Source of the DNA: Macrostomum lignano
Taxonomy: Eukaryota
Reading direction: 5' to 3'
Assembly (NCBI GenBank): GCA_002269645.1
Contig: NIVC01000547.1
Location: forward strand, 1 to 30,471
Length of the DNA: 30,471 nt
Of this stretch, positions 8,872 through 21,131 are shown piece after piece; positions within the stretch are counted from its first letter, which is position 1, and every line of letters starts with the position of its first letter. The notes below the pieces were generated by a model. It was not told the origin of the DNA. It made no database searches and saw only the letters and a list, made by a program, of their open reading frames with translations. Made by a program: the position numbers and the translations under genes.

Positions 8872-10519
8872 ATCGATCACAGATCACAGAATCGGAGTTA
8901 AGGAGGGCGATGACAGAATCGATGAGGTGGAGGGCGATGACCGATCATATAGAATCGGTGAGGTGAAGGGCGATGACCGATAATATAATCGTTGAGGTGA
9001 AAGGCGATGACCGATCATATAATCAATGAGGTGGAGGGCGATGACCGATCGCAGAATCGGAGTCGAGGAGGGCGATGACCGATCACAGAATCGAAGCGAA
9101 GGAGGGCGATGACCGATCACAGAATCGAAGCGAAGGAGGGCGATGACCGATCACAGAATCGAAGCGAAGGAGGGCGATGACCGATCACAGAATCGGAGTT
9201 AAGGAGGGCGATGACCGATCACAGAATCGGAGTTAAGGAGGGCGATGACCGATCACAGAATCGGAGTTAAGGAGGGCGATGAACGATCACAGAATCGGAG
9301 TTAAGGAGGACGATGACCGATCATACAATCGGAGTCAAGGAGGGCGATGACTGATCACAGAATCGGAGTTAAGGAGGGCGATGACCGATCATAGAATCGG
9401 AGTCAAGGAGGGCGATGACCGATCATAGAATCGGAGTCAAGGAGGGCGATAACCGATCACAGAATCGGAGTTAAGGAGGGCGATGACCGATCACAGAATC
9501 GGAGTTAAGGAGGGCGATGACCGATCACAGAATCGGAGTTAAGGAGGACGATGACCGATCATATAATCGGAGTCAAGGAGGGCGATGACCGATCATAGAA
9601 TCGAAGTCAAGGAGGGCGATGACCGATCACAGAATCGGAGTTAAGGAGGGCGATGACCGATCATAGAATCGGAGTTAAGGAGGACGATGACCGATCATAG
9701 AATCGGAGTCAAGGAGGGCGATGACCGATCATAGAATCGGAGTCAAGGAGGGCGATGACCGATCACAGAATTGGAGCGAAGGAGGGCGATGACCGATCAC
9801 AGAATCGGTAAGGTGAAGGGCGATGACCGATCATAGAATCGGAGTCAAGGAGGGCGATGACCGATCACAGAATTGGAGCGAAGGAGGGCGATGACCGATC
9901 ACAGAATCGGAGCGAAGGAGGGCGATGACCGATCACAGAATCGGAGCGAAGGAGGGCGATGACCGATCACAGAATTGGAGCGAAGGAGGGCGATGACCGA
10001 TCACAGAATCGGAGCGAAGGAGGGCGATGACCGATCACAGAATCGGTGAGGTGAAGGGCGATGACCGATCACAGAATCGGAGCGAAGGAGGGCGATGACC
10101 GATCACAGAATCGGTGAGGTGAAGGGCGATGACCGATCACAGAATTGGAGCGAAGGAGGGCGATGACCGATCACAGAATCGGTGAGGTGAAGGGCGATGA
10201 CCGATCACAAAATCGATGAGGTGGAGGGCGATGACCGATCATAGAATCGGAGCTGAGAAGGGCGATGACCGATCACAGAATCGGTGAGGTGAAGGGCGAT
10301 GACCGATCACAAAATCGATGAGGTGGAGGGCGATGACCGATCATAAAATCGGAGCTGAGAAGGGCGATGACCGATCACAGAATCGGAGTTTATGAGGGCG
10401 ATGACCAATTACAGAATCGATGAGGTGGAGGGCGATGACCGATCATAGAATCGGAGTTGAGGGGGCGATGATCGATCATAGAATCAGAGCTGAGGGGGGG
10501 GGGCGATGACCGATCACAG
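8872..10519. repeat. 34-bp minisatellite GGGCGATGACCGATCACAGAATCG + variable 10 nt, ~48 copies
   Basis: Period 34 verified (9171 vs 9205); variant segments GAGTTAAGGA, GAGTCAAGGA, GAGCGAAGGA, GTGAGGTGAA, ATGAGGTGGA, GAGCTGAGAA. Confidence 0.97.
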
Positions 10520-12204
10520 GTATCTTTTAAATGTCTAATTGAGTCAAACAGGTGCAGAGATCTCACCTTTGTTAACAGCCGGTTAAGAATTTGGACAAAA
10601 GCTAATTAGGAGCAATATTTTAAATTAGTTGACGAGTCGATAAAAAATGACGCATGTTGCGTTAAACTTTTCGGTTGAGCAAAGCTAAACCAGAAGCCGC
10701 TGTCTGTGACCCGTTCTGCAATTTTATAGCCAAATAGGCGGTGGATAACAATTTTTTTGGCTGGAGTGGCGTGGAACAGCAGAAACCCATCTCTATCCGG
10801 CTTTGAGAAGGGCAGGGATGGCGGAGGGAGACGGCTGAGAGGGTGAAGGGTTGACTGAAGGGGGGCGAGGTGGGGGGGGCTCTGACCCCGCACTAGCGGG
10901 CTGGGGGAATCCGCATCTTCTCAAACACCCCACGAAAGTCGCGAATCAGACTCAGCTCCGCCTACCCCATCCTCTCTTCTCCCCTGGCTCTTCTGTCGTC
11001 TGCTTTTCCTTCCCCCCCCCTGCGCTGGCTTTTCCCGGCTTCAACTGGAAACTGGGAGGCGGGCAGGGGGAGACAGCATTGCCAGCATCCAGCTCATACC
11101 CATAGGGAGCTGTACTCAACCTCCCGGTCGGACATGAAGCTTCATTCTCTTTGCACTCTTGACTCTCCACATGCTCTGTCCCGGGTTTCTCTTGCCCTAT
11201 CCTGCACCCCCCCCCCAGTGCACTCGGGTGGCGAACGAGCTTTCTCGCGCCTGCTCAATTAAGAAGCTCAGGCAGAATTTCGTTCTGTACGCTTTCACCC
11301 CAGCGTCCAGCTATTTCAGTGGCACACTTTTGCGTGCAAGGAGAATATCGCCGCTTAGGGGGGGGGGATAAATTTAGAAATCCCCTCAGTCCAAACTCTC
11401 CCTCTAACCACCAGCCAGCTCGAAATGAGCGCCTCAGGATGGCCTCGAGCGCATCTCCTGATCGCCACCCCGCCCACCAGCAAAGTGTAACTATTACTCC
11501 GAGGCCGAGTGCAGATGGACAGATACCCCCTCCTGAGACAGCCAGAGTCCTGCACCACCCACTCCGAATTGGCGATCCCAATAAAGCCGGCTAAAATCCC
11601 CAACCCGCACCTCGAGAGCTACCCAGTATTCGAGAGCTATGACTATAAATACTCGGACAGAATTCCTTCTGCATCCCTATTTTTTGCTCGATTGCTGAGA
11701 CTGGCCCCAGCTGGGAGATCTTAGCCCGGGGGCAAACCGCCACAGAGAGTGCACACATTCCTGCGGCGACAAATATGGGCAGAATTGTCGTCAGCTCTGG
11801 TTGTGATACGATGTCTTCCAAAGGTTGCTTGCAGCTGCACAGAGATGCCAGAGCCAAATTTGCTGTACAAAACGGGAGATGATTGCATGGCTTCAGTGCA
11901 CCTTCCAAACTGTCGTTCCCAGCAGACAGGCAGCTATCAATTATTTTCTCTCGCTCCACTTGAGATCTACAACAGATATACAACAGACAAATGACAAAAG
12001 TGACGATATCGAAAAAAGCGTTTGCTATTTTTAAAAAATGAAACTGCTTATCAAACAATTTGAAAGGATCAATTTTAAAAAAATGCTTCAACTCGCGCGC
12101 CAACATGGGTTTGTGTTTCTGTACGAGCTACTTGTAGTAGCCTGACTATAGGTCAACAACAAAAATACGGTCGATGTGAACGTTCGAAGCTACTACATGA
12201 ACTG

Positions 12205-12541
12205 TGACGAATAATAATGTAATAGTAATAATTGATTACACCTGCACTAAACGGCCAGATGTGCAACCGACAGCTCAGCCGCAGCTATTGCGCGGCGCAT
12301 CTGAAGGCTGCGTACGGCTGTTCAGTCCAAGCACTGGGGGGTCGCCACACACCCTTAATTACCTCAGATTACGCTGGCAACCATTTTACAGCTGGGTGAA
12401 GCTGTTAAAGCATTTTACAGCTGGGCGATGCAGAGTTAAGTATTTTGCTCAAGGATACAAATTTTTCCCGATTGGGTCGAGAATCGAACCCCCGACCTTT
12501 CAGTCGTGAGTCCGACGCTCTGACCACTAGGCTGCAAACCC
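12205..12541 (-). mobile_element. tRNA-derived CORE-type SINE
   Basis: Minus strand has a tRNA-like head with A-box-like TAGTGGTCAGAGC and B-box GGTTCGATTC. Next comes TGTATCCTTGAGCAAAATACTTAAC...CAGCTGTAAAATGG, resembling the CORE/MIR motifs CCTTGGGCAAG..ACTTAAC and CTGTAAAATGG. A 3' body and a (TAT)-rich tail follow near 12208-12240. No clear target-site duplication. Confidence 0.8.
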
Positions 12542-12974
12542 GTAGTGACCAATGAATTTTTTTATAGTTTCGACTTGAGAAGCCAGTCTTGACTTTGGAG
12601 TTGACTTTGAGACGTAACTTTACCCCACCCCCCCTGGGAGACGTATATAAGGAATTCCTTTAAAATATGAGCTTTACCTTGACCGTGAGCATAGGATAAA
12701 ATAGTTTAGCTTCTTCCTCTTAGTCATGGCTAGATGTGTGCGTATCGATTTAAAGACTATCTATATAGACCAAAATAACTTGTCCAGACTATCCAGTGTT
12801 GGTGTGCATATGGCCCTATATCTATTCGTACATGCGTTCTCGTTAAAACACTTCCTAATGCTAAGAGGATTAATTATTCGAAAGATTTTTCCAAATGCGT
12901 TCGTTCGATTGGCGATCAAAGCATTCCAAAAAAACTTGAATTCCAAAAGAATTCCAAAAGAAACTTGAAAAACT

Positions 12975-13470
12975 TGAACGCAGAAGGCTGCGACCTTCTC
13001 CCAGCACACCGGAACCTGCTCTACCGTTGTCCAGAACGAACTTCTCGCCATCAGCTGCTGTCACCACTCGGATCAACCAGTGGGTGGCTTCAAAGCACAG
13101 GGAGAGGTGGGCTAACGCCCCCGACTGCCGGCAATCCCGCGCGGCTGTCCCCTGTCTTTCCCCCGCCCTCCGCAGGGCCCTGCATGCTTGGACTCAACCT
13201 CAGGGACATCAGGGCGGTCTCTCGGGTCATGGCCGTTTTGCCAGGCATCGCCACTTCCGGGGAAAATCCGTAGTGAGAAATGCCCATTCTGTCTCTTCGG
13301 TGTTGAGCATGCGGAGCACTTCATTTATGAATGCTTCACCTTTACTCTGGACAGGCTCACTTACCTCGGACAAAACCCTGGACGCTTCCAGGCCCGAGAG
13401 TTTCGATCTCTGCCAGCTCGTCCGCTACCTAAGGACGAGCGACCATTTGCCTCCTGGACTCTCCAGAGGG
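12975..13470 (+). mobile_element. Frameshifted 3' fragment of a non-LTR retrotransposon ORF2 (post-RNase H region and CCHC knuckle; LOA/R1/I-like)
   Basis: Joined across frames: PEPALPLS...INQWVASKHRERWANAPDCRQSR / LGLNLRDIRAV / LSGHGRFARHRHFRGK / IRSEKCPFCLFGVEHAEHFIYECFTFTLDRLTYLG / LVRYLR. This matches the W..W..CRQ, L.GH...H, C-x2-C-x7-H-x4-C, R...LG pattern at the C-terminus of such elements. At least 3-4 frameshifts; no RT domain upstream (5' truncated). Confidence 0.75.
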
Positions 13471-13809
13471 GGGACCGCGCTGCGGACACCGACACCACCG
13501 GATCTCCCTGCACGACACCGCAGCACCAGCTGCCCGTGGTCGCCAGGGGTTAGCTAGAGCGACGAGATCTCTACAATCTTAGAGATTACAAGGCTCTGTA
13601 ATGTCCGGGTAAATCTTAGCAGAAAAGACGTGCGGGCCATCACCATGACCTTCACGGTGCTACGCCAAGCATTGTTTTTTCCGCCTAGACATTAAAAATA
13701 ACAAGCATTTTGTCTGCCAATTTCTAGTCTTTGACAAGGATCGACTGCAATACATTGGGCCAAGCCCATGCTTGGGAATACGTCCATGAAATAGGTCTTA
13801 GTGTCTGTC

Positions 13810-14609: not shown

Positions 14610-15332
14610 TTAGTAACGATAGGGGCCATTGTACCTGGCCGTGGATCGGAAACGCATGGCGGAACCGAGGTAGCGCTTGCCCTGCCGCTGGTACCAGTTC
14701 GGCCAGGAGTACCGCCACCGACGTTCGCCTCCAAAACGAACGGCGGCGCCAAGATGTCTTTTAACCAGCTGTTCAGCAGAATCCTCCAAATCGTTGTTAG
14801 CGTCTTGGTCAATGTTGTGCGCAACACCTGTATCGAAGTACCAGTCAGCAAGGTAAGGCAGATTGTAGCTTCGCTTGTAATTAGGCACGCTCCAACGCCA
14901 GGGCGTGCCGACGTGACGCTTGAAACGGAGTCTCATAGCAGAGCCCATGTTCTTCTTGCTTCGGAGTCTCATCGCAGAGCCCATGTTCTTCTTGCTTCGG
15001 AGTCTCATAGCAGAGCCTAAGTACTTCTTGCCTCGAAGTCTCATGGCAGAAGCCATGCTCTTTTTGCCTCGAAATCTCATGGCAGAGCCCATGTTCTTCT
15101 TGCCTCGAAATCTCATGGCAGAACCCATGTTCTTCTTGCCTCGAAATTTCATGGCAGAACCCATGTTCTTCTTGCCTCGAAATCTCATGGCAGAACCCAT
15201 GTTCTTCTTGCTTCGGAGCCTCATGGCAGAGCCCAAGTACCGTTTAACCTGCTCAATTCGATTTATCAGGTCGCTTGAAGCGCTTTGAGAAAATTCCTGC
15301 AGCGTTGGCTCATTGTCAATCGAATTGGCGCT
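14610..15332 (-). CDS. Neuropeptide precursor, coding exon 2 (repeated xGSAM(R/K)(F/L)R peptides and Trp-rich peptides)
   Basis: Acceptor aattgatttcag|AGC at 15333/15332, phase 0. Translation: SANSIDNEPTLQEFSQSASSDLINRIEQV-KR-YLGSAMRLRS-KK-[8 further copies, five ending G-KK]-...-KR-HVGTPWRWSVPNY-KR-acidic spacer-KR-HLGAAVRFGGE-RR-WRYSWPNWYQRQG-KR-YLGSAMRFRSTARYNGPYRY*. Repeat copies differ at synonymous sites (Ala GCT/GCC/GCG, Gly GGC/GGT, Leu TTA/TTG, Lys AAA/AAG) and have no indels. Confidence 0.9.
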   Translation of the reverse strand, partial: SANSIDNEPTLQEFSQSASSDLINRIEQVKRYLGSAMRLRSKKNMGSAMRFRGKKNMGSAMKFRGKKNMGSAMRFRGKKNMGSAMRFRGKKSMASAMRLRGKKYLGSAMRLRSKKNMGSAMRLRSKKNMGSAMRLRFKRHVGTPWRWSVPNYKRSYNLPYLADWYFDTGVAHNIDQDANNDLEDSAEQLVKRHLGAAVRFGGERRWRYSWPNWYQRQGKRYLGSAMRFRSTARYNGPYRY

Positions 15333-15421
15333 CTGAAATCAATTGATTAGCGATGCAGATTGAGTGAGGGCTAGTTTGAAATGATTAAAAATATAGGTGC
15401 AACTCGGTAAGTAGGACTCAC
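15333..15421 (-). other. 89-nt phase-0 GT-AG intron of the neuropeptide precursor gene
   Basis: GAG|GTGAGT donor at 15421; ...TTTCAG acceptor at 15333; joins the signal peptide in frame with the peptide repeats. Confidence 0.88.
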
Positions 15422-15481
15422 CTCGGCGATCACGGCAAGTGCGCTGCACAGAAGCAACATCAGTAGAGCTGCCCGGGTCAT
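15422..15481 (-). CDS. Neuropeptide precursor, coding exon 1 (signal peptide MTRAALLMLLLCSALAVIAE)
   Basis: ATG at 15481, basic residue, hydrophobic core and small-residue cleavage region. Ends at a GTGAGT donor. Preceded by the acceptor ttttatctccaacatttcag| at 15510 with a 28-nt leader. Confidence 0.88.
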
Positions 15482-16364
15482 TTCTCAGTAAGGCGGAGTT
15501 TTGCGAGGCCTGAAATGTTGGAGATAAAACAGTAGCGACTTCGCTAAAAATTTCTGTCACGTCTGATCAAGCTGTTTGATTTTGAGCTGAATAAATTAGA
15601 CAAATTTTACAGCTTCATAACAAGCTGAGTGAAACGTTTTCTTTCCTAGAAATGATTTGTTTTCAAAATCAGGCATCACGCAAAGCAGTAGAGGTCTTGA
15701 GCAGCTTTGCGAGTCCACAGCAGCATTCCGATGCCAAATTTGAATTTGAGAAGCTCTCGCGGAGACCGCTAGGATTACCCAGAGCGATTGCACAAGACAT
15801 TTGCTTAATCTCAATCCCTGTTAATTCTGCTCGGGTAGCACAAGCTGTCAGCGGATTTGTGCATAATCTAAAATATGCTTCATCACGTAATTACTGCAAG
15901 CCTAATGGAGCCCAACAACCAAATGGCTATAAATCCGCTCTACGAGTATGCTTGAGTCTCGCTTAGCGAGTTCATTGAGTAAGCAAGTCTGGCTGAGTTA
16001 CAGACAGCCACCTGCAGCCTGTAGTTGCTACGCTAGACTTACTCAGTAGGCGAATGAAGTTCTGCAGCCTTGATCGAGTCTGTGTTTGAAATCTGTATTT
16101 ATTCAATGAGCAGAAAAAATTCTATGTCGAATTCTAGGGGGAACGGAGGCGAAATCCAAGTGGAGAGGGAACGCGAAAGATTTTCGTCGCTTTTATTTTT
16201 CACTACTCGAAACTGAGACTACTGAGAACACTGGATGGGCTGAGACCGTCAGGTACAACCAATGAGAACGCGTCTTGGTGAGAATGAAGCTCAGTACAAG
16301 CTCAGAAAATGCTGCACCGAAAAATCCTCATTGGTCATTTCAGGGAGTCGAATTTAAAAAAAAG

Positions 16365-16850
16365 TTTGAGCTCAGGTTCGAGAATAGAGTTCAGTTTCAG
16401 ATTCGAGTTCGGGTAGGGCTTAGGTTCGGTATTTGAGTAGGGTTTAGGTTCGGGTTTCGGGTAGGGTTTAGGTTCAGGATTCGGGTAGGGTTTACATGTA
16501 GGTTCGGATTTCGGGTAGGGTTTAGGTTCGGGATTCGGGTAGGGTTTAGGTTCGGGTTTCGGGTAGGGTTTAGGTTCGGGATTCGGGTAGGGTTTAGGTT
16601 CGGGATTTGGGTAGGGTTTAGGTTCGGGATTCGGGTAGGGTTTAGGTTCGGGTTTCGGGTAGGGTTTAGGTTCGGGATTTGGGTAGGGTTTAGGTTCGGG
16701 ATTCGGGTAGGGTTTAGGTTCGGGTTTCGGGTAGGGTTTAGGTTCGGGTTTCGGGTAGGGTTTAGGTTCTGGATTGGAGTAGAGTTTCGGATTCGAGTTT
16801 AGACTCAAGCTTCGAGCTTCTAGTTCAGGTTTAACGATTTTCAATTCGAA
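16365..16850. repeat. 24-bp telomere-like G-rich minisatellite GGGTAGGGTTTAGGTTCGGG(A/T)TTC, ~15 good copies plus degenerate hexamer flanks
   Basis: Unit is four hexamers, each close to a rotation of TTAGGG; flanks decay into hexamer-periodic sequence. Confidence 0.93.
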
Positions 16851-18905: not shown

Positions 18906-19222
18906 GCTGATATTGTGTCAGGTTACTAGTCTTGGAAAAGCGCAAAACCAAAAAAAAATTTTCCAAATCGAAATTATAAAAACATTTCTTTTCAAATTTT
19001 AGAGGCTGGTTATTCATTGTCACGTATTCTCTGTCTTTTTATTAAAATGAGGGCGAAAGAGTTAAAATTAGGATATGCATTTATTGGCTCAGCCGCAATG
19101 CTTCTCGTTGCATCAATTGGCGAATGTGTTAAGGTCGTTGTTTAACTGTTTCTTTAACGTTTAACTAGGGAGTAGGTCCATTTTGTAAACATTTCGCTCG
19201 CATGCATTCAGAGCAGAACCAG

Positions 19223-21131
19223 AATGGATTGCTAATCTAAGAGTATCTCATTCAATGTAGAATCATAATGGATTGCTAATCTAAGAGTATCTCATTCAAT
19301 GTAGAATCATAATGGATTGCTAATCTAAGAGTATCTCATTCAATGTAGAATCATAATGGATTGCTAATCTAAGAGTATCTCATTCAATGTAGAATCATAA
19401 TGGATTGCTAATCTAAGAGTATCTCATTCAATGTAGAATCATAATGGATTGCTAATCTAAGAGTATCTCATTCAATGTAGAATCATAATGGATTGCTAAT
19501 CTAAGAGTATCTCATTCAATGTAGAATCATAATGGATTGCTAATCTAAGAGTATCTCATTCAATTTAGAATCATAATGGATTGCTAATCTAAGAGTATCT
19601 CATTCAATGTAGAATCATAATGGATTGCTAATCTAAGAGTATCTCATTCAATGTAGAATCATAATGGATTGCTAATCTAAGAGTATCTCATTCAATGTAG
19701 AATCATAATGGATTGCTAATCTAAGAGTATCTCATTCAATGTAGAATCATAATGGATTGCTAATCTAAGAGTATCTCATTCAATGTAGAATCATAATGGA
19801 TTGCTAATCTAAGAGTATCTCATTCAATGTAGAATCATAATGGATTGCTAATCTAAGAGTATCTCATTCAATGTAGAATCATAATGGATTGCTAATCTAA
19901 GAGTATCTCATTCAATGTAGAATCATAATGGATTGCTAATCTAAGAGTATCTCATTCAATGTAGAATCATAATGGATTGCTAATCTAAGAGTATCTCATT
20001 CAATGTAGAATCGTACTGGATTGCTAATCTAAGAGTATCTCATTCAATGTAGAATCATAATGGATTGCTAATCTAAGAGTATCTCATTCAATGTAGAATC
20101 GTACTGGATTGCTAATCTAAGAGTATCTCATTCAATGTAGAATCATAATGGATTGCTAATCTAAGAGTATCTCATTCAATGTAGAATCATAATGGATTGC
20201 TAATCTAAGAGTATCTCATTCAATGTAGAATCATAATGGATTGCTAATCTAAGAGTATCTCATTCAATGTAGAATCATAATGGATTGCTAATCTAAGAGT
20301 ATCTCATTCAATGTAGAATCGTACTGGATTGCTAATCTAAGAGTATCTCATTCAATGTAGAATCATAATGGATTGCTAATCTAAGAGTATCTCATTCAAT
20401 GTAGAATCATAATGGATTGCTAATCTAAGAGTATCTCATTCAATGTAGAATCATAATGGATTGCTAATCTAAGAGTATCTCATTCAATGTAGAATCATAA
20501 TGGATTGCTAATCTAAGAGTATCTCATTCAATGTAGAATCATAATGGATTGCTAATCTAAGAGTATCTCATTCAATTTAGAATCATAATGGATTGCTAAT
20601 CTAAGAGTATCTCATTCAATGTAGAATCATAATGGATTGCTAATCTAAGAGTATCTCATTCAATGTAGAATCATAATGGATTGCTAATCTAAGAGTATCT
20701 CATTCAATGTAGAATCATAATGGATTGCTAATCTAAGAGTATCTCATTCAATGTAGAATCATAATGGATTGCTAATCTAAGAGTATCTCATTCAATTTAG
20801 AATCATAATGGATTGCTAATCTAAGAGTATATCATTCAATTTAGAATCATAATGGATTGCTAATCTAAGAGTATCTCATTCAATGTAGAATCATAATGGA
20901 TTGCTAATCTAAGAGTATCTCATTCAATGTAGAATCATAATGGATTGCTAATCTAAGAGTATCTCATTCAATGTAGAATCATAATGGATTGCTAATCTAA
21001 GAGTATCTCATTCAATGTAGAATCATAATGGATTGCTAATCTAAGAGTATCTCATTCAATGTAGAATCATAATGGATTGCTAATCTAAGAGTTTCTCATT
21101 CAATGTAGAATCATAATGGATTGCTAATCTA
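19223..21131. repeat. 44-bp highly homogeneous minisatellite ATGGATTGCTAATCTAAGAGTATCTCATTCAATGTAGAATCATA, ~43 copies
   Basis: Period 44 verified (19223 vs 19267); only a few variant copies. Confidence 0.98.

What the first reader, a model, noticed from the sequence alone, without database searches (positions are those of the whole stretch)
14610..15509. Complete, unrecognised neuropeptide prohormone hidden among minisatellites (xGSAMRFR-amide type)
Seen: a 36-bp repeat that looks like just another minisatellite is in frame with a signal-peptide exon across an 89-nt GT-AG intron, giving a ~260-aa secreted precursor. Nine tandem copies of (NM/YL/SM)(G/A)SAM(R/K)(F/L)R are separated by KK/KR, with a tenth at the C-terminus. 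Established: signal peptide + acidic spacers + dibasic sites + Gly before the dibasic pair is the classic prohormone convertase/PAM amidation architecture. Inference: the main products are NMGSAMRFR-amide-like peptides. I do not recognise the family. It only loosely recalls FMRFamide-like/myomodulin peptides and Hydra FRamides, so it may be undescribed.
Basis: partly seen in the sequence, partly recalled or inferred. Interest (0 to 1): 0.88.

Follow-up and report, generated by a model that had tools for sequence, protein, structure and literature searches.

The report
Flatworm HIGA-type neuropeptide precursor gene
The 36-bp "minisatellite" is the coding repeat of a real, spliced, secreted multi-copy peptide precursor in the flatworm Macrostomum lignano, but it belongs to the already described spiralian "HIGA" neuropeptide family rather than being a new family.

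Summary
On the minus strand, exon 1 (15481-15422, signal peptide), an 89-nt GT-AG intron and exon 2 (15332-14610) give a 260-aa precursor. It has nine tandem 12-residue units plus a tenth diverged copy. The window is Macrostomum lignano. The identical protein is already deposited as "hypothetical protein BOX15_Mlig010852g1", from an annotation built only from RNA-seq transcripts, so the splice is transcript-supported.

It is a prohormone, but not of an undescribed "RFR-amide" family.
- Only 5 of 9 units carry the amidation Gly; in the paralogue only 1 of 7 does.
- What is conserved is the N-terminus x(L/M)G(S/A)A(M/L)(R/K)(F/L) directly after the dibasic site.
- That is the signature of HIGA, a proneuropeptide named in the annelid Platynereis dumerilii (MS-confirmed, non-amidated KR-to-KR peptides) and later found in nemerteans.
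- The M. lignano protein hits Platynereis HIGA at phmmer E = 3.7e-33 and none of eight control precursors.

I found no flatworm HIGA in the accessible literature, so this is a new member of a known kind. A weaker but systematic resemblance to arthropod NPLP1 peptides (e.g. shared IGSLAR) is the most novel reading left open.

The parts
15482..15509 (-). Probable 5' UTR downstream of a candidate splice acceptor (CAACATTTCAG|G; the AG is at 15511-15510). This may be a spliced-leader trans-splice site or a 5'UTR intron acceptor.
   Evidence: Sequence only. The stretch is conserved in the paralogous locus. About 39% of M. lignano genes are trans-spliced. This is an inference and was not tested.
15422..15481 (-). 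Exon 1: Met1-Glu20, the signal peptide (MTR + 16 hydrophobic residues + AVIA|ES).
   Evidence: mean Kyte-Doolittle hydropathy of aa 4-19 is 2.76, small residues sit at -3/-1 (V-I-A), and the one basic residue is in the n-region. The three exon-1 differences from the paralogue are all synonymous. SignalP itself was not available.
15333..15421 (-). 89-nt phase-0 intron, GTGAGT...TTTCAG.
   Evidence: Read-through terminates after 36 aa. The spliced product equals the deposited transcript-derived model P0001. The same intron is present in paralogous locus L001 at 10061-10149.
15240..15332 (-). N-terminal propeptide SANSIDNEPTLQEFSQSASSDLINRIEQV followed by the first KR site (aa 21-51).
   Evidence: Identical in the paralogue, with one synonymous change.
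14916..15239 (-). Nine tandem 36-bp / 12-aa units (aa 52-159): YLGSAMRLRS-KK, 3x NMGSAMRFRG-KK, NMGSAMKFRG-KK, SMASAMRLRG-KK, YLGSAMRLRS-KK, NMGSAMRLRS-KK, NMGSAMRLRF-KR. These are HIGA-type peptide units.
   Evidence: TRF array 14929-15235. Units and codon analysis, pN/pS 0.34 in frame. Each unit scores p < 3e-6 on a profile built only from published HIGA units; SMASAM scores 5e-5.
14871..14915 (-). HVGTPWRWSVPNY + KR, a Trp-rich non-HIGA fragment of unknown status.
   Evidence: It has one V/A replacement in the paralogue and only a weak fit to the HIGA profile (p = 0.01).
14757..14870 (-). Acidic spacer SYNLPYLADWYFDTGVAHNIDQDANNDLEDSAEQLV + KR.
   Evidence: It carries four of the seven paralogue replacements and the NN indel, i.e. 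it is the least constrained part.
14673..14756 (-). 'Long' HIGA unit HLGAAVRFGGERRWRYSWPNWYQRQG + KR, the only unit that keeps the canonical N-terminal His. It is predicted to be C-terminally amidated (…QRQ-NH2) if the internal ERR is not cleaved.
   Evidence: It aligns with the long units of Platynereis (HLGPALNVGYGGQFWF…), the nemerteans (YLGSLLRSGFGTRKENYPWW…) and the anonymous relatives (HLGSALNMRFGGWRYRQGES). This segment is what retrieved P0078 in the exhaustive profile search.
14610..14672 (-). C-terminal tenth unit YLGSAMRFRSTARYNGPYRY and the TAA stop (14610-14612).
   Evidence: Its DNA is strongly diverged from the tandem units (pS 0.76) but the peptide core is kept (pN/pS 0.39). Identical in the paralogue apart from two synonymous changes.

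Best explanation
This is the Macrostomum lignano orthologue, one of two recently duplicated copies, of the spiralian HIGA proneuropeptide gene.

Shown:
- A two-exon gene encodes a 260-aa protein with an N-terminal signal-peptide-like exon.
- The spliced form exists as a transcript-derived GenBank model.
- The protein contains 11 HIGA-type units, each starting immediately after KK/KR with x(L/M)(G/A)(S/A)A(M/V)(R/K)(F/L).
- It is significantly and specifically similar to the published HIGA precursors of an annelid and of nemerteans.
- The coding sequence is under purifying selection.

Inferred mechanism:
1. The signal peptide is removed, predicted after Ala19.
2. Prohormone convertase 2 cuts at the KK/KR pairs. 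M. lignano has a neural, essential pc2 homologue.
3. A carboxypeptidase trims the basic residues.
4. The five Gly-extended tandem units and the long unit are amidated.

The predicted mixture is 3x NMGSAMRFR-NH2, NMGSAMKFR-NH2, SMASAMRLR-NH2, 2x YLGSAMRLRS, NMGSAMRLRS, NMGSAMRLRF, HLGAAVRFGGERRWRYSWPNWYQRQ-NH2 and YLGSAMRFRSTARYNGPYRY. Receptor recognition most likely depends on the conserved N-terminal core, as the family-wide conservation pattern suggests, and not on an RFR-amide C-terminus.

The flatworm version is a compacted variant. The acidic tails that follow each peptide in annelid and nemertean HIGA are lost, the units abut through KK, and the canonical His1 is replaced by Asn, Tyr or Ser in 10 of 11 units. 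Neuronal expression, the receptor and the physiological role are unknown. HIGA is an orphan family.
For: - Gene structure and frame.
- Identity to deposited model BOX15_Mlig010852g1, and paralogue BOX15_Mlig018182g1.
- The GenBank annotation of Mlig_3_7 derives only from the RNA-seq genome-guided transcriptome: PMC5730564.
- Selection: pN/pS 0.34 among units against 0.68 and 1.34 out of frame; 0.17 between paralogues, p = 1.4e-4, with replacements concentrated in the spacer.
- Family identification: the HIGA precursor of Platynereis (GenBank KF515947) and the nemertean HIGA sequences found in supplements and described in text.
- Formal similarity: phmmer E = 3.7e-33 to Platynereis HIGA; seven nemertean entries typed in from the Thiel 2021 list hit at E from 5e-11 down to 0.8; BLASTP E = 1.3e-12 with composition correction; none of 8 control KR-rich multi-copy precursors hit. 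The non-repeat C-terminal third alone scores E = 1e-15.
- Unit-level test: each unit has p < 3e-6 (one at 5e-5) on a profile of 73 published HIGA units, and p <= 1e-5 for seven of the eight distinct units (SMASAMRLRG p = 1.5e-4) on an independent profile from anonymous relatives.
- The shared 'long unit' aligns across phyla.
- Processing precedent: Platynereis HIGA peptides were detected by MS as KR-to-KR fragments starting with H(I/L)G.
- pc2 homologue in M. lignano: nervous-system in situ pattern, lethal RNAi (PMC4490696).
Against: - There are no direct expression, localisation or peptidomic data for this gene. 'Neuro' is inherited from the family name.
- SignalP could not be run.
- Repeat-rich queries inflate HMMER and BLAST statistics. 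This is mitigated, not eliminated, by the eight negative controls and by the non-repeat-only query.
- The canonical N-terminal His is missing from 10 of 11 units and the acidic tails are absent, so the peptides may not act on the same receptor as annelid HIGA.
- The word-indexed database search with a unit profile found nothing, and the exhaustive search found only three other HIGA-like proteins, so taxon sampling is thin.
The precursor might already be listed there under an npp number.
Confidence: 0.85

Rival explanations
1. It founds a new, flatworm-specific 'xGSAMRFR-amide' neuropeptide family, unrelated to known families. The RFR-amide C-terminus would be the pharmacophore.
For: Five of the nine tandem units are Gly-extended and would give ...(R/K)(F/L)R-NH2. 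'GSAMRF' occurs in no searchable paper. Pfam has no model for it.
Against: The Gly position is variable within the gene and is A/S/G/F in the paralogue, with only one Gly in seven units. There is significant, control-checked similarity to the published HIGA precursors, including in the non-repeat part. Nemertean HIGA contains near-identical units such as HLGSAMRLG-KK and FLGSAMRYRQR.
Confidence: 0.04
2. It is a HIGA-derived gene whose products are not neuronal signals. They would be secreted cationic peptides with another role, for example gland, epidermal or antimicrobial secretion.
For: The peptides are short and strongly basic (Arg 34 and Lys 22 of 260 residues). No expression data were obtainable. 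HIGA has no known receptor or function.
Against: The architecture (signal peptide, KK/KR sites, Gly-extended copies) and the conservation of a precise 6-8-residue core across three phyla are typical of receptor ligands. The Platynereis HIGA peptides were recovered in a neuropeptidome study.
Confidence: 0.08
3. It is a non-functional open frame: a minisatellite that happens to be in frame, or a decaying duplicate, with the gene model being an annotation artefact.
For: About 62% of the window is tandem repeat, and several arrays have periods divisible by three. The deposited paralogue protein has one unit fewer than its genomic locus, showing that repeat collapse occurs in the annotation.
Against: Frame-specific purifying selection. 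Both copies are intact. The model is transcript-derived. Cross-phylum homology includes the non-repeat part. A tenth unit is strongly diverged at the DNA level but conserved as peptide.
Confidence: 0.03

Closest known systems
HIGA proneuropeptide of Platynereis dumerilii (GenBank KF515947; Conzelmann et al. 2013, PMC3890597)
   Same: Both have a signal peptide and many copies of peptides that begin directly after KR with H(I/L)GAAM(R/N)L, e.g. HIGAAMRLRPSKFED against NMGSAMRLRS. Both have one 'long' unit, HLGPALNVGYGGQFWF… against HLGAAVRFGGERRWRYSW…. Both show a mix of mostly non-amidated and a few amidated products. phmmer E = 3.7e-33.
   Different: The annelid precursor is more than 850 aa with about 35 units, each carrying an acidic tail before the next KR. 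The flatworm precursor is 260 aa and its units are trimmed to 10 residues and joined by KK with no acidic tails. His1 is replaced by Asn/Tyr/Ser in 10 of 11 units. Position 4 is Ser rather than Ala in most units.
Nemertean HIGA precursors (Thiel et al. 2021, PMC8557429, supplementary proneuropeptide list)
   Same: These have the closest unit sequences: HLGSAMRLG-KK, HLGSAMKFG-KR, FLGSAMRYRQR…, NLGSAMRWKGG-KR and YLGSLLRSG…YPWW. Short, basic, often Gly-extended units with KK sites occur as in M. lignano.
   Different: The nemertean units keep His1 and mostly keep acidic spacers (…GKKDDDEFEKR…). Their precursors also have a conserved N-terminal HLGSLARHNWLPKPAIRYYPF region that M. lignano lacks.
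Arthropod neuropeptide-like precursor 1 (NPLP1; Drosophila peptides MTYamide, IPNamide, VQQ, etc.)
   Same: The logic is the same: one precursor and several peptides that share only their N-terminal stretch right after the dibasic site, with a mix of amidated and free-acid C-termini. The motif is similar: YIGSLAR/NVGTLAR/NLGALK against YLGSAMR/NMGSAMR/HLGAAL. Nemertean HIGA even contains HIGSLAR. All six Drosophila NPLP1 peptides outrank 17 other Drosophila neuropeptides on the HIGA profile (Mann-Whitney p = 1e-5; single-peptide p from 2e-5 to 0.02).
   Different: Only short-motif similarity was tested. No full NPLP1 precursor was available for a profile-profile comparison. The six peptides are paralogous, so the statistics are not independent, and the hypothesis was chosen post hoc. 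No paper I could search links NPLP1 with a lophotrochozoan family.
Flatworm myomodulin-like (npp-6 / mpl-1,2: AVRLMRLamide) and npp-14 / spp-4 (GLRNMRMamide, GLRLMRLamide) peptides (Collins et al. 2010, PMC2953531)
   Same: They come from the same phylum, are multi-copy basic peptides, and contain an (A/L)MRL string.
   Different: Those families are defined by a C-terminal MR(L/M)-amide. Here MRL is followed by R plus a variable residue, and no unit ends in MRL-Gly. They do not fit the HIGA N-terminal profile (p = 0.26-0.66). No HIGA-type motif occurs in the planarian peptidome supplements.

Membership tests
HIGA proneuropeptide family (Spiralia) | Significant, specific sequence similarity to the reference HIGA precursor(s). 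| tested here: met
   phmmer E = 3.7e-33 and BLASTP E = 1.3e-12 to Platynereis HIGA. Seven nemertean entries typed in from Thiel 2021 are hit. Zero of 8 control multi-copy Platynereis precursors are hit. The non-repeat C-terminal part alone scores E = 1e-15.
HIGA proneuropeptide family (Spiralia) | Multiple peptide copies that start immediately after a dibasic site with H-(L/I/M)-G-(S/A)-A-(M/L). | tested here: met
   Eleven units have x(L/M)(G/A)(S/A)A(M/V)(R/K)(F/L) right after KK/KR. Their profile scores have p < 3e-6, with one at 5e-5. Deviation: His1 is kept in only 1 of 11 units and is Asn/Tyr/Ser elsewhere. N, Y and F also occur at this position in published nemertean units.
HIGA proneuropeptide family (Spiralia) | N-terminal signal peptide (secreted precursor). 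| tested here: met
   Heuristic only: MTR + 16-residue hydrophobic core (mean KD 2.76) + AVIA|ES. Platynereis HIGA is SignalP-positive. SignalP was not available here.
HIGA proneuropeptide family (Spiralia) | Presence of the single 'long' unit HLGxAL..(F/Y)G(G/T).W.Y. | tested here: met
   HLGAAVRFGGERRWRYSWPNWYQRQG aligns with the long units of Platynereis, the nemerteans, P0078 and P0094. It was the segment that retrieved P0078.
HIGA proneuropeptide family (Spiralia) | An acidic tail or spacer after each peptide core, before the next KR. | tested here: not met
   The tandem units abut through KK with no acidic residues, and there is only one acidic spacer (aa 175-210). This is a typical rather than a defining feature. 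Nemertean HLGSAMKFG-KR-HLGSAL… also abut. I treat it as a variant trait, not an exclusion.
HIGA proneuropeptide family (Spiralia) | Mature peptides detectable by mass spectrometry; neuronal expression. | not testable with these tools
   Shown for Platynereis only. There are no M. lignano peptidomic or in situ data for this gene.
NPLP1 (arthropod neuropeptide-like precursor 1) | Several peptides sharing an N-terminal x-(I/V/L)-(G/A)-(S/T/A)-(L/V/M)-A-R motif after a dibasic site. | tested here: inconclusive
   All six MS-verified Drosophila NPLP1 peptides score above 17 control peptides on the HIGA profile (MWU p = 1e-5). The M. lignano units score p = 0.0007-0.02 on an NPLP1 profile. The motif is short, the peptides are non-independent and the hypothesis is post hoc.
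NPLP1 (arthropod neuropeptide-like precursor 1) | Whole-precursor homology or orthology (profile-profile, synteny, receptor). | not tested
FMRFamide-like peptides (FaRPs/FLPs) | C-terminal -RF-amide, i.e. RF-Gly followed by a basic site in the precursor. | tested here: not met
   No unit has RF-G-(K/R). The units end ...RFR-G-KK...RLR-S/F-K(K/R), and HLGAAVRFGG is followed by ERR.
Myomodulin-like peptides (flatworm mpl / npp-6) | C-terminal -(L/M)R(L/M)-amide. | tested here: not met
   No unit ends in MRL-Gly. The known flatworm peptides AVRLMRLa and GLRLMRLa do not fit the HIGA profile.

The most novel reading that the evidence does not exclude
Spiralian HIGA and arthropod NPLP1 may be the same ancient protostome neuropeptide family. 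Both are multi-copy precursors whose peptides are recognised through a conserved N-terminal x-φ-G-(S/T/A)-φ-(A/M)-(R/K) core, with free or amidated variable tails. The M. lignano gene would then be the flatworm orthologue of NPLP1. Because one NPLP1 peptide is reported to signal through the receptor guanylyl cyclase Gyc76C (cited in PMC4022047), HIGA peptides might act through receptor guanylyl cyclases rather than GPCRs. Independently of that, this would be the first HIGA member reported from Platyhelminthes, which would push the family back to the last common ancestor of flatworms, annelids and nemerteans.
Probability: 0.35. Interest if true: 0.6.

Novelty: new member of a known kind. Interest (0 to 1): 0.4.

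Why it matters
HIGA is an orphan peptide family. It was known only from sequence and mass spectrometry in one annelid, and from transcriptomes of nemerteans, and has no receptor or function. A flatworm member extends the family across Spiralia. It also places the family in Macrostomum lignano, an animal with transgenesis, RNAi and in situ methods, where its function could actually be tested.

The flatworm gene shows how such a precursor can be compacted into a minisatellite-like 36-bp coding array, with copy number and the amidation site evolving quickly between very recent duplicates. The gene is worth re-annotating from 'hypothetical protein'.

If the NPLP1 link holds, two 'lineage-specific' families would merge into one protostome-wide system.

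Tried and rejected
1. Exhaustive profile search with the two M. lignano paralogues. 90 of 91 hits were spurious 12-residue-periodic repeat proteins matching only the repeat block, e.g. LGSSLSLRSFAR arrays. Only P0078 was real.
2. Word-indexed search with a profile of peptide units. The 48-column concatemer version found nothing at E <= 1, not even known members. It was uninformative and used the last search.
3. Pfam scans of the precursor and its relatives gave only repeat-driven noise. Other ORFs in the window had no Pfam hit and there were no Rfam families.
4. Literature string searches for GSAMRF, HLGSAM and similar in main texts returned nothing relevant. The family was found only in supplementary files.
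5. Flatworm sources contain no HIGA-type motif: the planarian peptidome supplements, the T. crassiceps npp supplement and the S. mansoni cercarial peptidome. McVeigh 2009 and Koziol 2016 are not held, so I cannot exclude an earlier npp designation.
6. The mollusc catalogue supplements showed only unrelated matches.
7. FMRFamide-like, myomodulin-like and Hydra-type affinities were rejected on C-terminal criteria and profile scores.
8. Paralogue comparison as a test of exon against intron constraint was uninformative. The loci are 95-99% identical everywhere.
9. The organisms of the anonymous relatives (ENA ERZ25767047 and ERZ26052287; Logan SRR30767268) could not be identified. Their best match is Platynereis HIGA.
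Full report
**1. What is in the sequence**

On the minus strand an ATG at 15481 opens a 60-nt exon. It ends at a consensus donor (GAG|GTGAGT, 15421). After an 89-nt intron with acceptor TTGATTTCAG|AG (15333), the frame continues for 723 nt to a TAA ending at 14610. Unspliced, the frame stops after 36 codons.

The 260-aa product reads as follows:
- MTRAALLMLLLCSALAVIA|E, the signal-peptide-like exon.
- A 29-residue propeptide, then KR.
- Nine tandem 12-residue units: YLGSAMRLRS-KK, three NMGSAMRFRG-KK, NMGSAMKFRG-KK, SMASAMRLRG-KK, YLGSAMRLRS-KK, NMGSAMRLRS-KK, NMGSAMRLRF-KR.
- HVGTPWRWSVPNY-KR.
- An acidic spacer, then KR.
- HLGAAVRFGGERRWRYSWPNWYQRQG-KR.
- YLGSAMRFRSTARYNGPYRY.

Tandem Repeats Finder reports the coding repeat as a 36-bp array (14929-15235) among 18 other arrays that cover about 62% of the window.

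Two details need correcting. Gly precedes the dibasic pair in only five of the nine tandem units. And the units abut directly, with no acidic spacers between them.

**2. Is it more than an open minisatellite?**

Yes, for four reasons.
- Among the nine units, variation is biased to synonymous changes only in the proposed frame: pN/pS is 0.34, against 0.68 and 1.34 in the other two frames. The tenth, C-terminal copy is heavily diverged at the DNA level (pS 0.76) but keeps the peptide core.
- The N-terminus has the features of a signal peptide: one basic residue, a 16-residue hydrophobic core with mean hydropathy 2.76, and V-I-A at -3 to -1. SignalP itself was not available.
- A database search shows that the window is Macrostomum lignano. 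The identical 260-aa protein is already deposited as "hypothetical protein BOX15_Mlig010852g1", and there is a paralogue, BOX15_Mlig018182g1.
- The genome paper states that the GenBank annotation was produced exclusively from the RNA-seq-based genome-guided transcriptome (PMC5730564).

**3. The paralogous locus**

The second copy lies on a 195-kb contig (L001). The whole window is colinear with it. The same minisatellite families occur in the same order but with very different copy numbers. This fits the known large-scale duplication in the sequenced DV1 line.

The two loci are 95-99% identical even in the intron and flanks. Exon-versus-intron conservation is therefore uninformative.

The non-repeat coding sequence is informative. 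It shows 12 synonymous against 7 non-synonymous differences (pN/pS 0.17, Fisher p = 1.4e-4). Four replacements and the only indel sit in the acidic spacer, and none sit in an xLGSAM core.

The paralogue's units end in A, A, A, A, S, G and F before the dibasic pair. The "amidation glycine" is thus the most variable position of the unit. This already argues against an RFR-amide pharmacophore.

**4. Finding the family**

An exhaustive HMMER search with the two paralogues returned 91 hits. Of these, 90 were spurious 12-residue-periodic proteins matching only the repeat block. One, P0078, matched the non-repeat C-terminal part.

P0078, an adjacent 732-aa ORF on the same contig, and two further anonymous proteins (P0093, P0094) are multi-copy precursors. 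Their units all begin, right after KR, with H(L/M/I/F)G(S/A/P)A(M/L). Examples are HLGSAMKFGHWNNEND, HMGAALAA-G-KR and HLGPAMRYFSSGDD. The conserved element is therefore the peptide N-terminus, and the C-termini are free to vary.

String searches of paper main texts found nothing. The supplementary files of two spiralian neuropeptidome papers did contain the motif:
- The Platynereis dumerilii proneuropeptide "HIGA" (GenBank KF515947; units such as KRHIGAAMRLRPSKFED and KRHLGAAMRLVQPKEND).
- A set of nemertean "HIGA" precursors (KRHLGSAMRLGKK, KRHLGSAMKFGKR, KRFLGSAMRYRQR…).

Conzelmann et al. introduced HIGA as a multi-copy precursor with MS support and no known orthologues at the time. Thiel et al. 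later found it in nemerteans but not in brachiopods or phoronids.

**5. Formal membership test**

Whole-protein comparison:
- The M. lignano protein hits Platynereis HIGA at phmmer E = 3.7e-33 (database size set to 1e5) and BLASTP E = 1.3e-12 (composition-corrected, database size 1e8).
- It hits seven nemertean entries typed in from the Thiel 2021 list.
- It hits none of eight other KR-rich multi-copy Platynereis precursors taken from the same file.
- The non-repeat C-terminal third alone still finds HIGA (E = 1e-15).

Unit-level comparison:
- On a position-specific profile built only from 73 published HIGA units, every M. lignano unit exceeds all 300,000 random peptides, except SMASAMRLRG at p = 5e-5.
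- An independent profile from the anonymous relatives gives p <= 1e-5 for all units but SMASAMRLRG (p = 1.5e-4).

A further shared feature is a single "long" unit, which aligns across all lineages:
- M. lignano: HLGAAVRFGGERRWRYSWPNW…
- Platynereis: HLGPALNVGYGGQFWF…
- Nemerteans: YLGSLLRSGFGTRKENYPWW…
- P0078: HLGSALNMRFGGWRYRQ…

I therefore file the gene as a HIGA-family member.

It differs from the described members in three ways. The units are trimmed to ten residues. They are joined by KK without acidic tails. The canonical His1 is replaced by Asn, Tyr or Ser in ten of eleven units. N, Y and F do occur at this position in a few nemertean units.

**6. How it most likely works**

By analogy with the reference species, the precursor is cut at each dibasic pair. 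In Platynereis, HLGSAIRWVDANRGRPGLE, HIGAAMNLAQADNENMD and two more were detected by MS as complete, non-amidated KR-to-KR fragments.

M. lignano has a prohormone convertase 2 homologue with a nervous-system expression pattern and a lethal RNAi phenotype (PMC4490696).

The predicted products are a mixture of amidated and free-acid peptides (list and masses). Because the N-terminal core is what is conserved across annelids, nemerteans and this flatworm, I infer that it carries receptor recognition.

Processing, neuronal expression, the receptor and the function are all inferred. None could be tested here, and HIGA as a family is still an orphan.

**7. Other comparisons**

FMRFamide-like and myomodulin-like assignments fail their defining C-terminal criteria. 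The known flatworm myomodulin-like and npp-14 peptides do not fit the HIGA profile.

A lead from memory was that arthropod NPLP1 peptides look similar. I checked it against MS-verified Drosophila sequences:
- NPLP1 peptides share only their N-terminal stretches, as HIGA units do.
- All six outrank 17 other Drosophila neuropeptides on the HIGA profile (Mann-Whitney p = 1e-5; best single p = 2e-5).
- Nemertean HIGA contains HIGSLAR, against Drosophila YIGSLAR.

The caveats are real. The motif is short, the six peptides are paralogous, the hypothesis was post hoc, and I could not obtain a full NPLP1 precursor. I rate common ancestry at about one in three.

None of the papers I could search connects NPLP1 with a lophotrochozoan family.

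**8. Novelty and verdict**

The gene model exists but is unannotated. The family is known.

I found no flatworm HIGA in the planarian, schistosome or cestode resources I could read, nor in Thiel's list.

The finding is best described as a real, correctly delineated gene that is a new, probably first platyhelminth, member of a known kind. It is not a new neuropeptide family. Interest is moderate. It extends an orphan spiralian peptide family into a genetically tractable flatworm and raises a testable HIGA-NPLP1 link.

Noticed in passing
window 5746-29019 vs L001 2009-20806: The whole window is a colinear segmental duplicate of a region of contig NIVC01001359.1. The same minisatellite families occur in the same order but with very different copy numbers: the 32-bp array has 19.5 copies here against 58.5 there, and the 23-bp array has 153 against about 16. 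The 44-bp AGAATCATAATGG… array at 19215-21131 has no counterpart among the TRF arrays of L001.
   Followed up: partly
L001 10001-10806 vs protein P0002: The genomic paralogue encodes seven tandem units (238 aa), but the deposited protein BOX15_Mlig018182g1 has six (226 aa). One 36-bp unit is missing from the transcript-derived model. The cause is either assembly collapse of the repeat or copy-number polymorphism.
   Followed up: partly
window 14610-15900 vs L001: Synonymous divergence between the two gene copies (pS 0.115) is higher than the divergence of the intron (2.2%), the 5' flank (1.2%) and the 3' flank (4.4%). This is unexpected for a simple recent duplication. Numbers are small. Possible causes are gene conversion of the flanks, conserved regulatory sequence, or repeat-associated mutation.
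   Followed up: no
window 15510-15535: A polypyrimidine-AG acceptor-like site (CTACTGTTTTATCTCCAACATTTCAG|G) lies 28 nt upstream of the ATG and is conserved in the paralogue. It could be the spliced-leader trans-splice acceptor. No AATAAA/ATTAAA motif was found within 300 nt downstream of the stop.
   Followed up: no
L002 2776-6698 (ENA ERZ25767047, 1.39-Mb contig): A very large HIGA-type precursor sits in an unidentified eukaryote inside a metagenome assembly. It has more than 40 alternating copies of HLGSAMKFGHWNNEND and HMGAALAA-G-KR, and prokaryote-style gene calling split it into two ORFs (P0078 plus a 732-aa ORF). Its best match is Platynereis HIGA (E = 1e-145), so the organism is probably an annelid. 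P0093 (L003) and P0094 (L004, Logan SRR30767268) are further unannotated family members.
   Followed up: partly
L001 1-1083: A sulfate-transporter (SLC26-type: Sulfate_transp + STAS) gene lies about 9 kb upstream of the paralogous HIGA gene. The corresponding position would lie beyond the end of the window, and I did not see it in the window.
   Followed up: no
window 10520-13795 and 15510-16367: The non-repeat stretches flanking the gene contain only short ORFs with no Pfam match. The window has no Rfam family at gathering threshold. No second gene was recognised in the 30 kb.
   Followed up: partly
Nemertean HIGA sequences (PMC8557429, supplementary file 2): Nemertean HIGA precursors share a conserved N-terminal block (KRHLGSLARHNWLPKPAIRYYPFLPSDDDRLPY…RRYLGSLLRSG…YPWWK) that is absent from the M. 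lignano precursor. The HLGSLAR/HIGSLAR units in it are the closest match to Drosophila NPLP1 YIGSLAR.
   Followed up: partly
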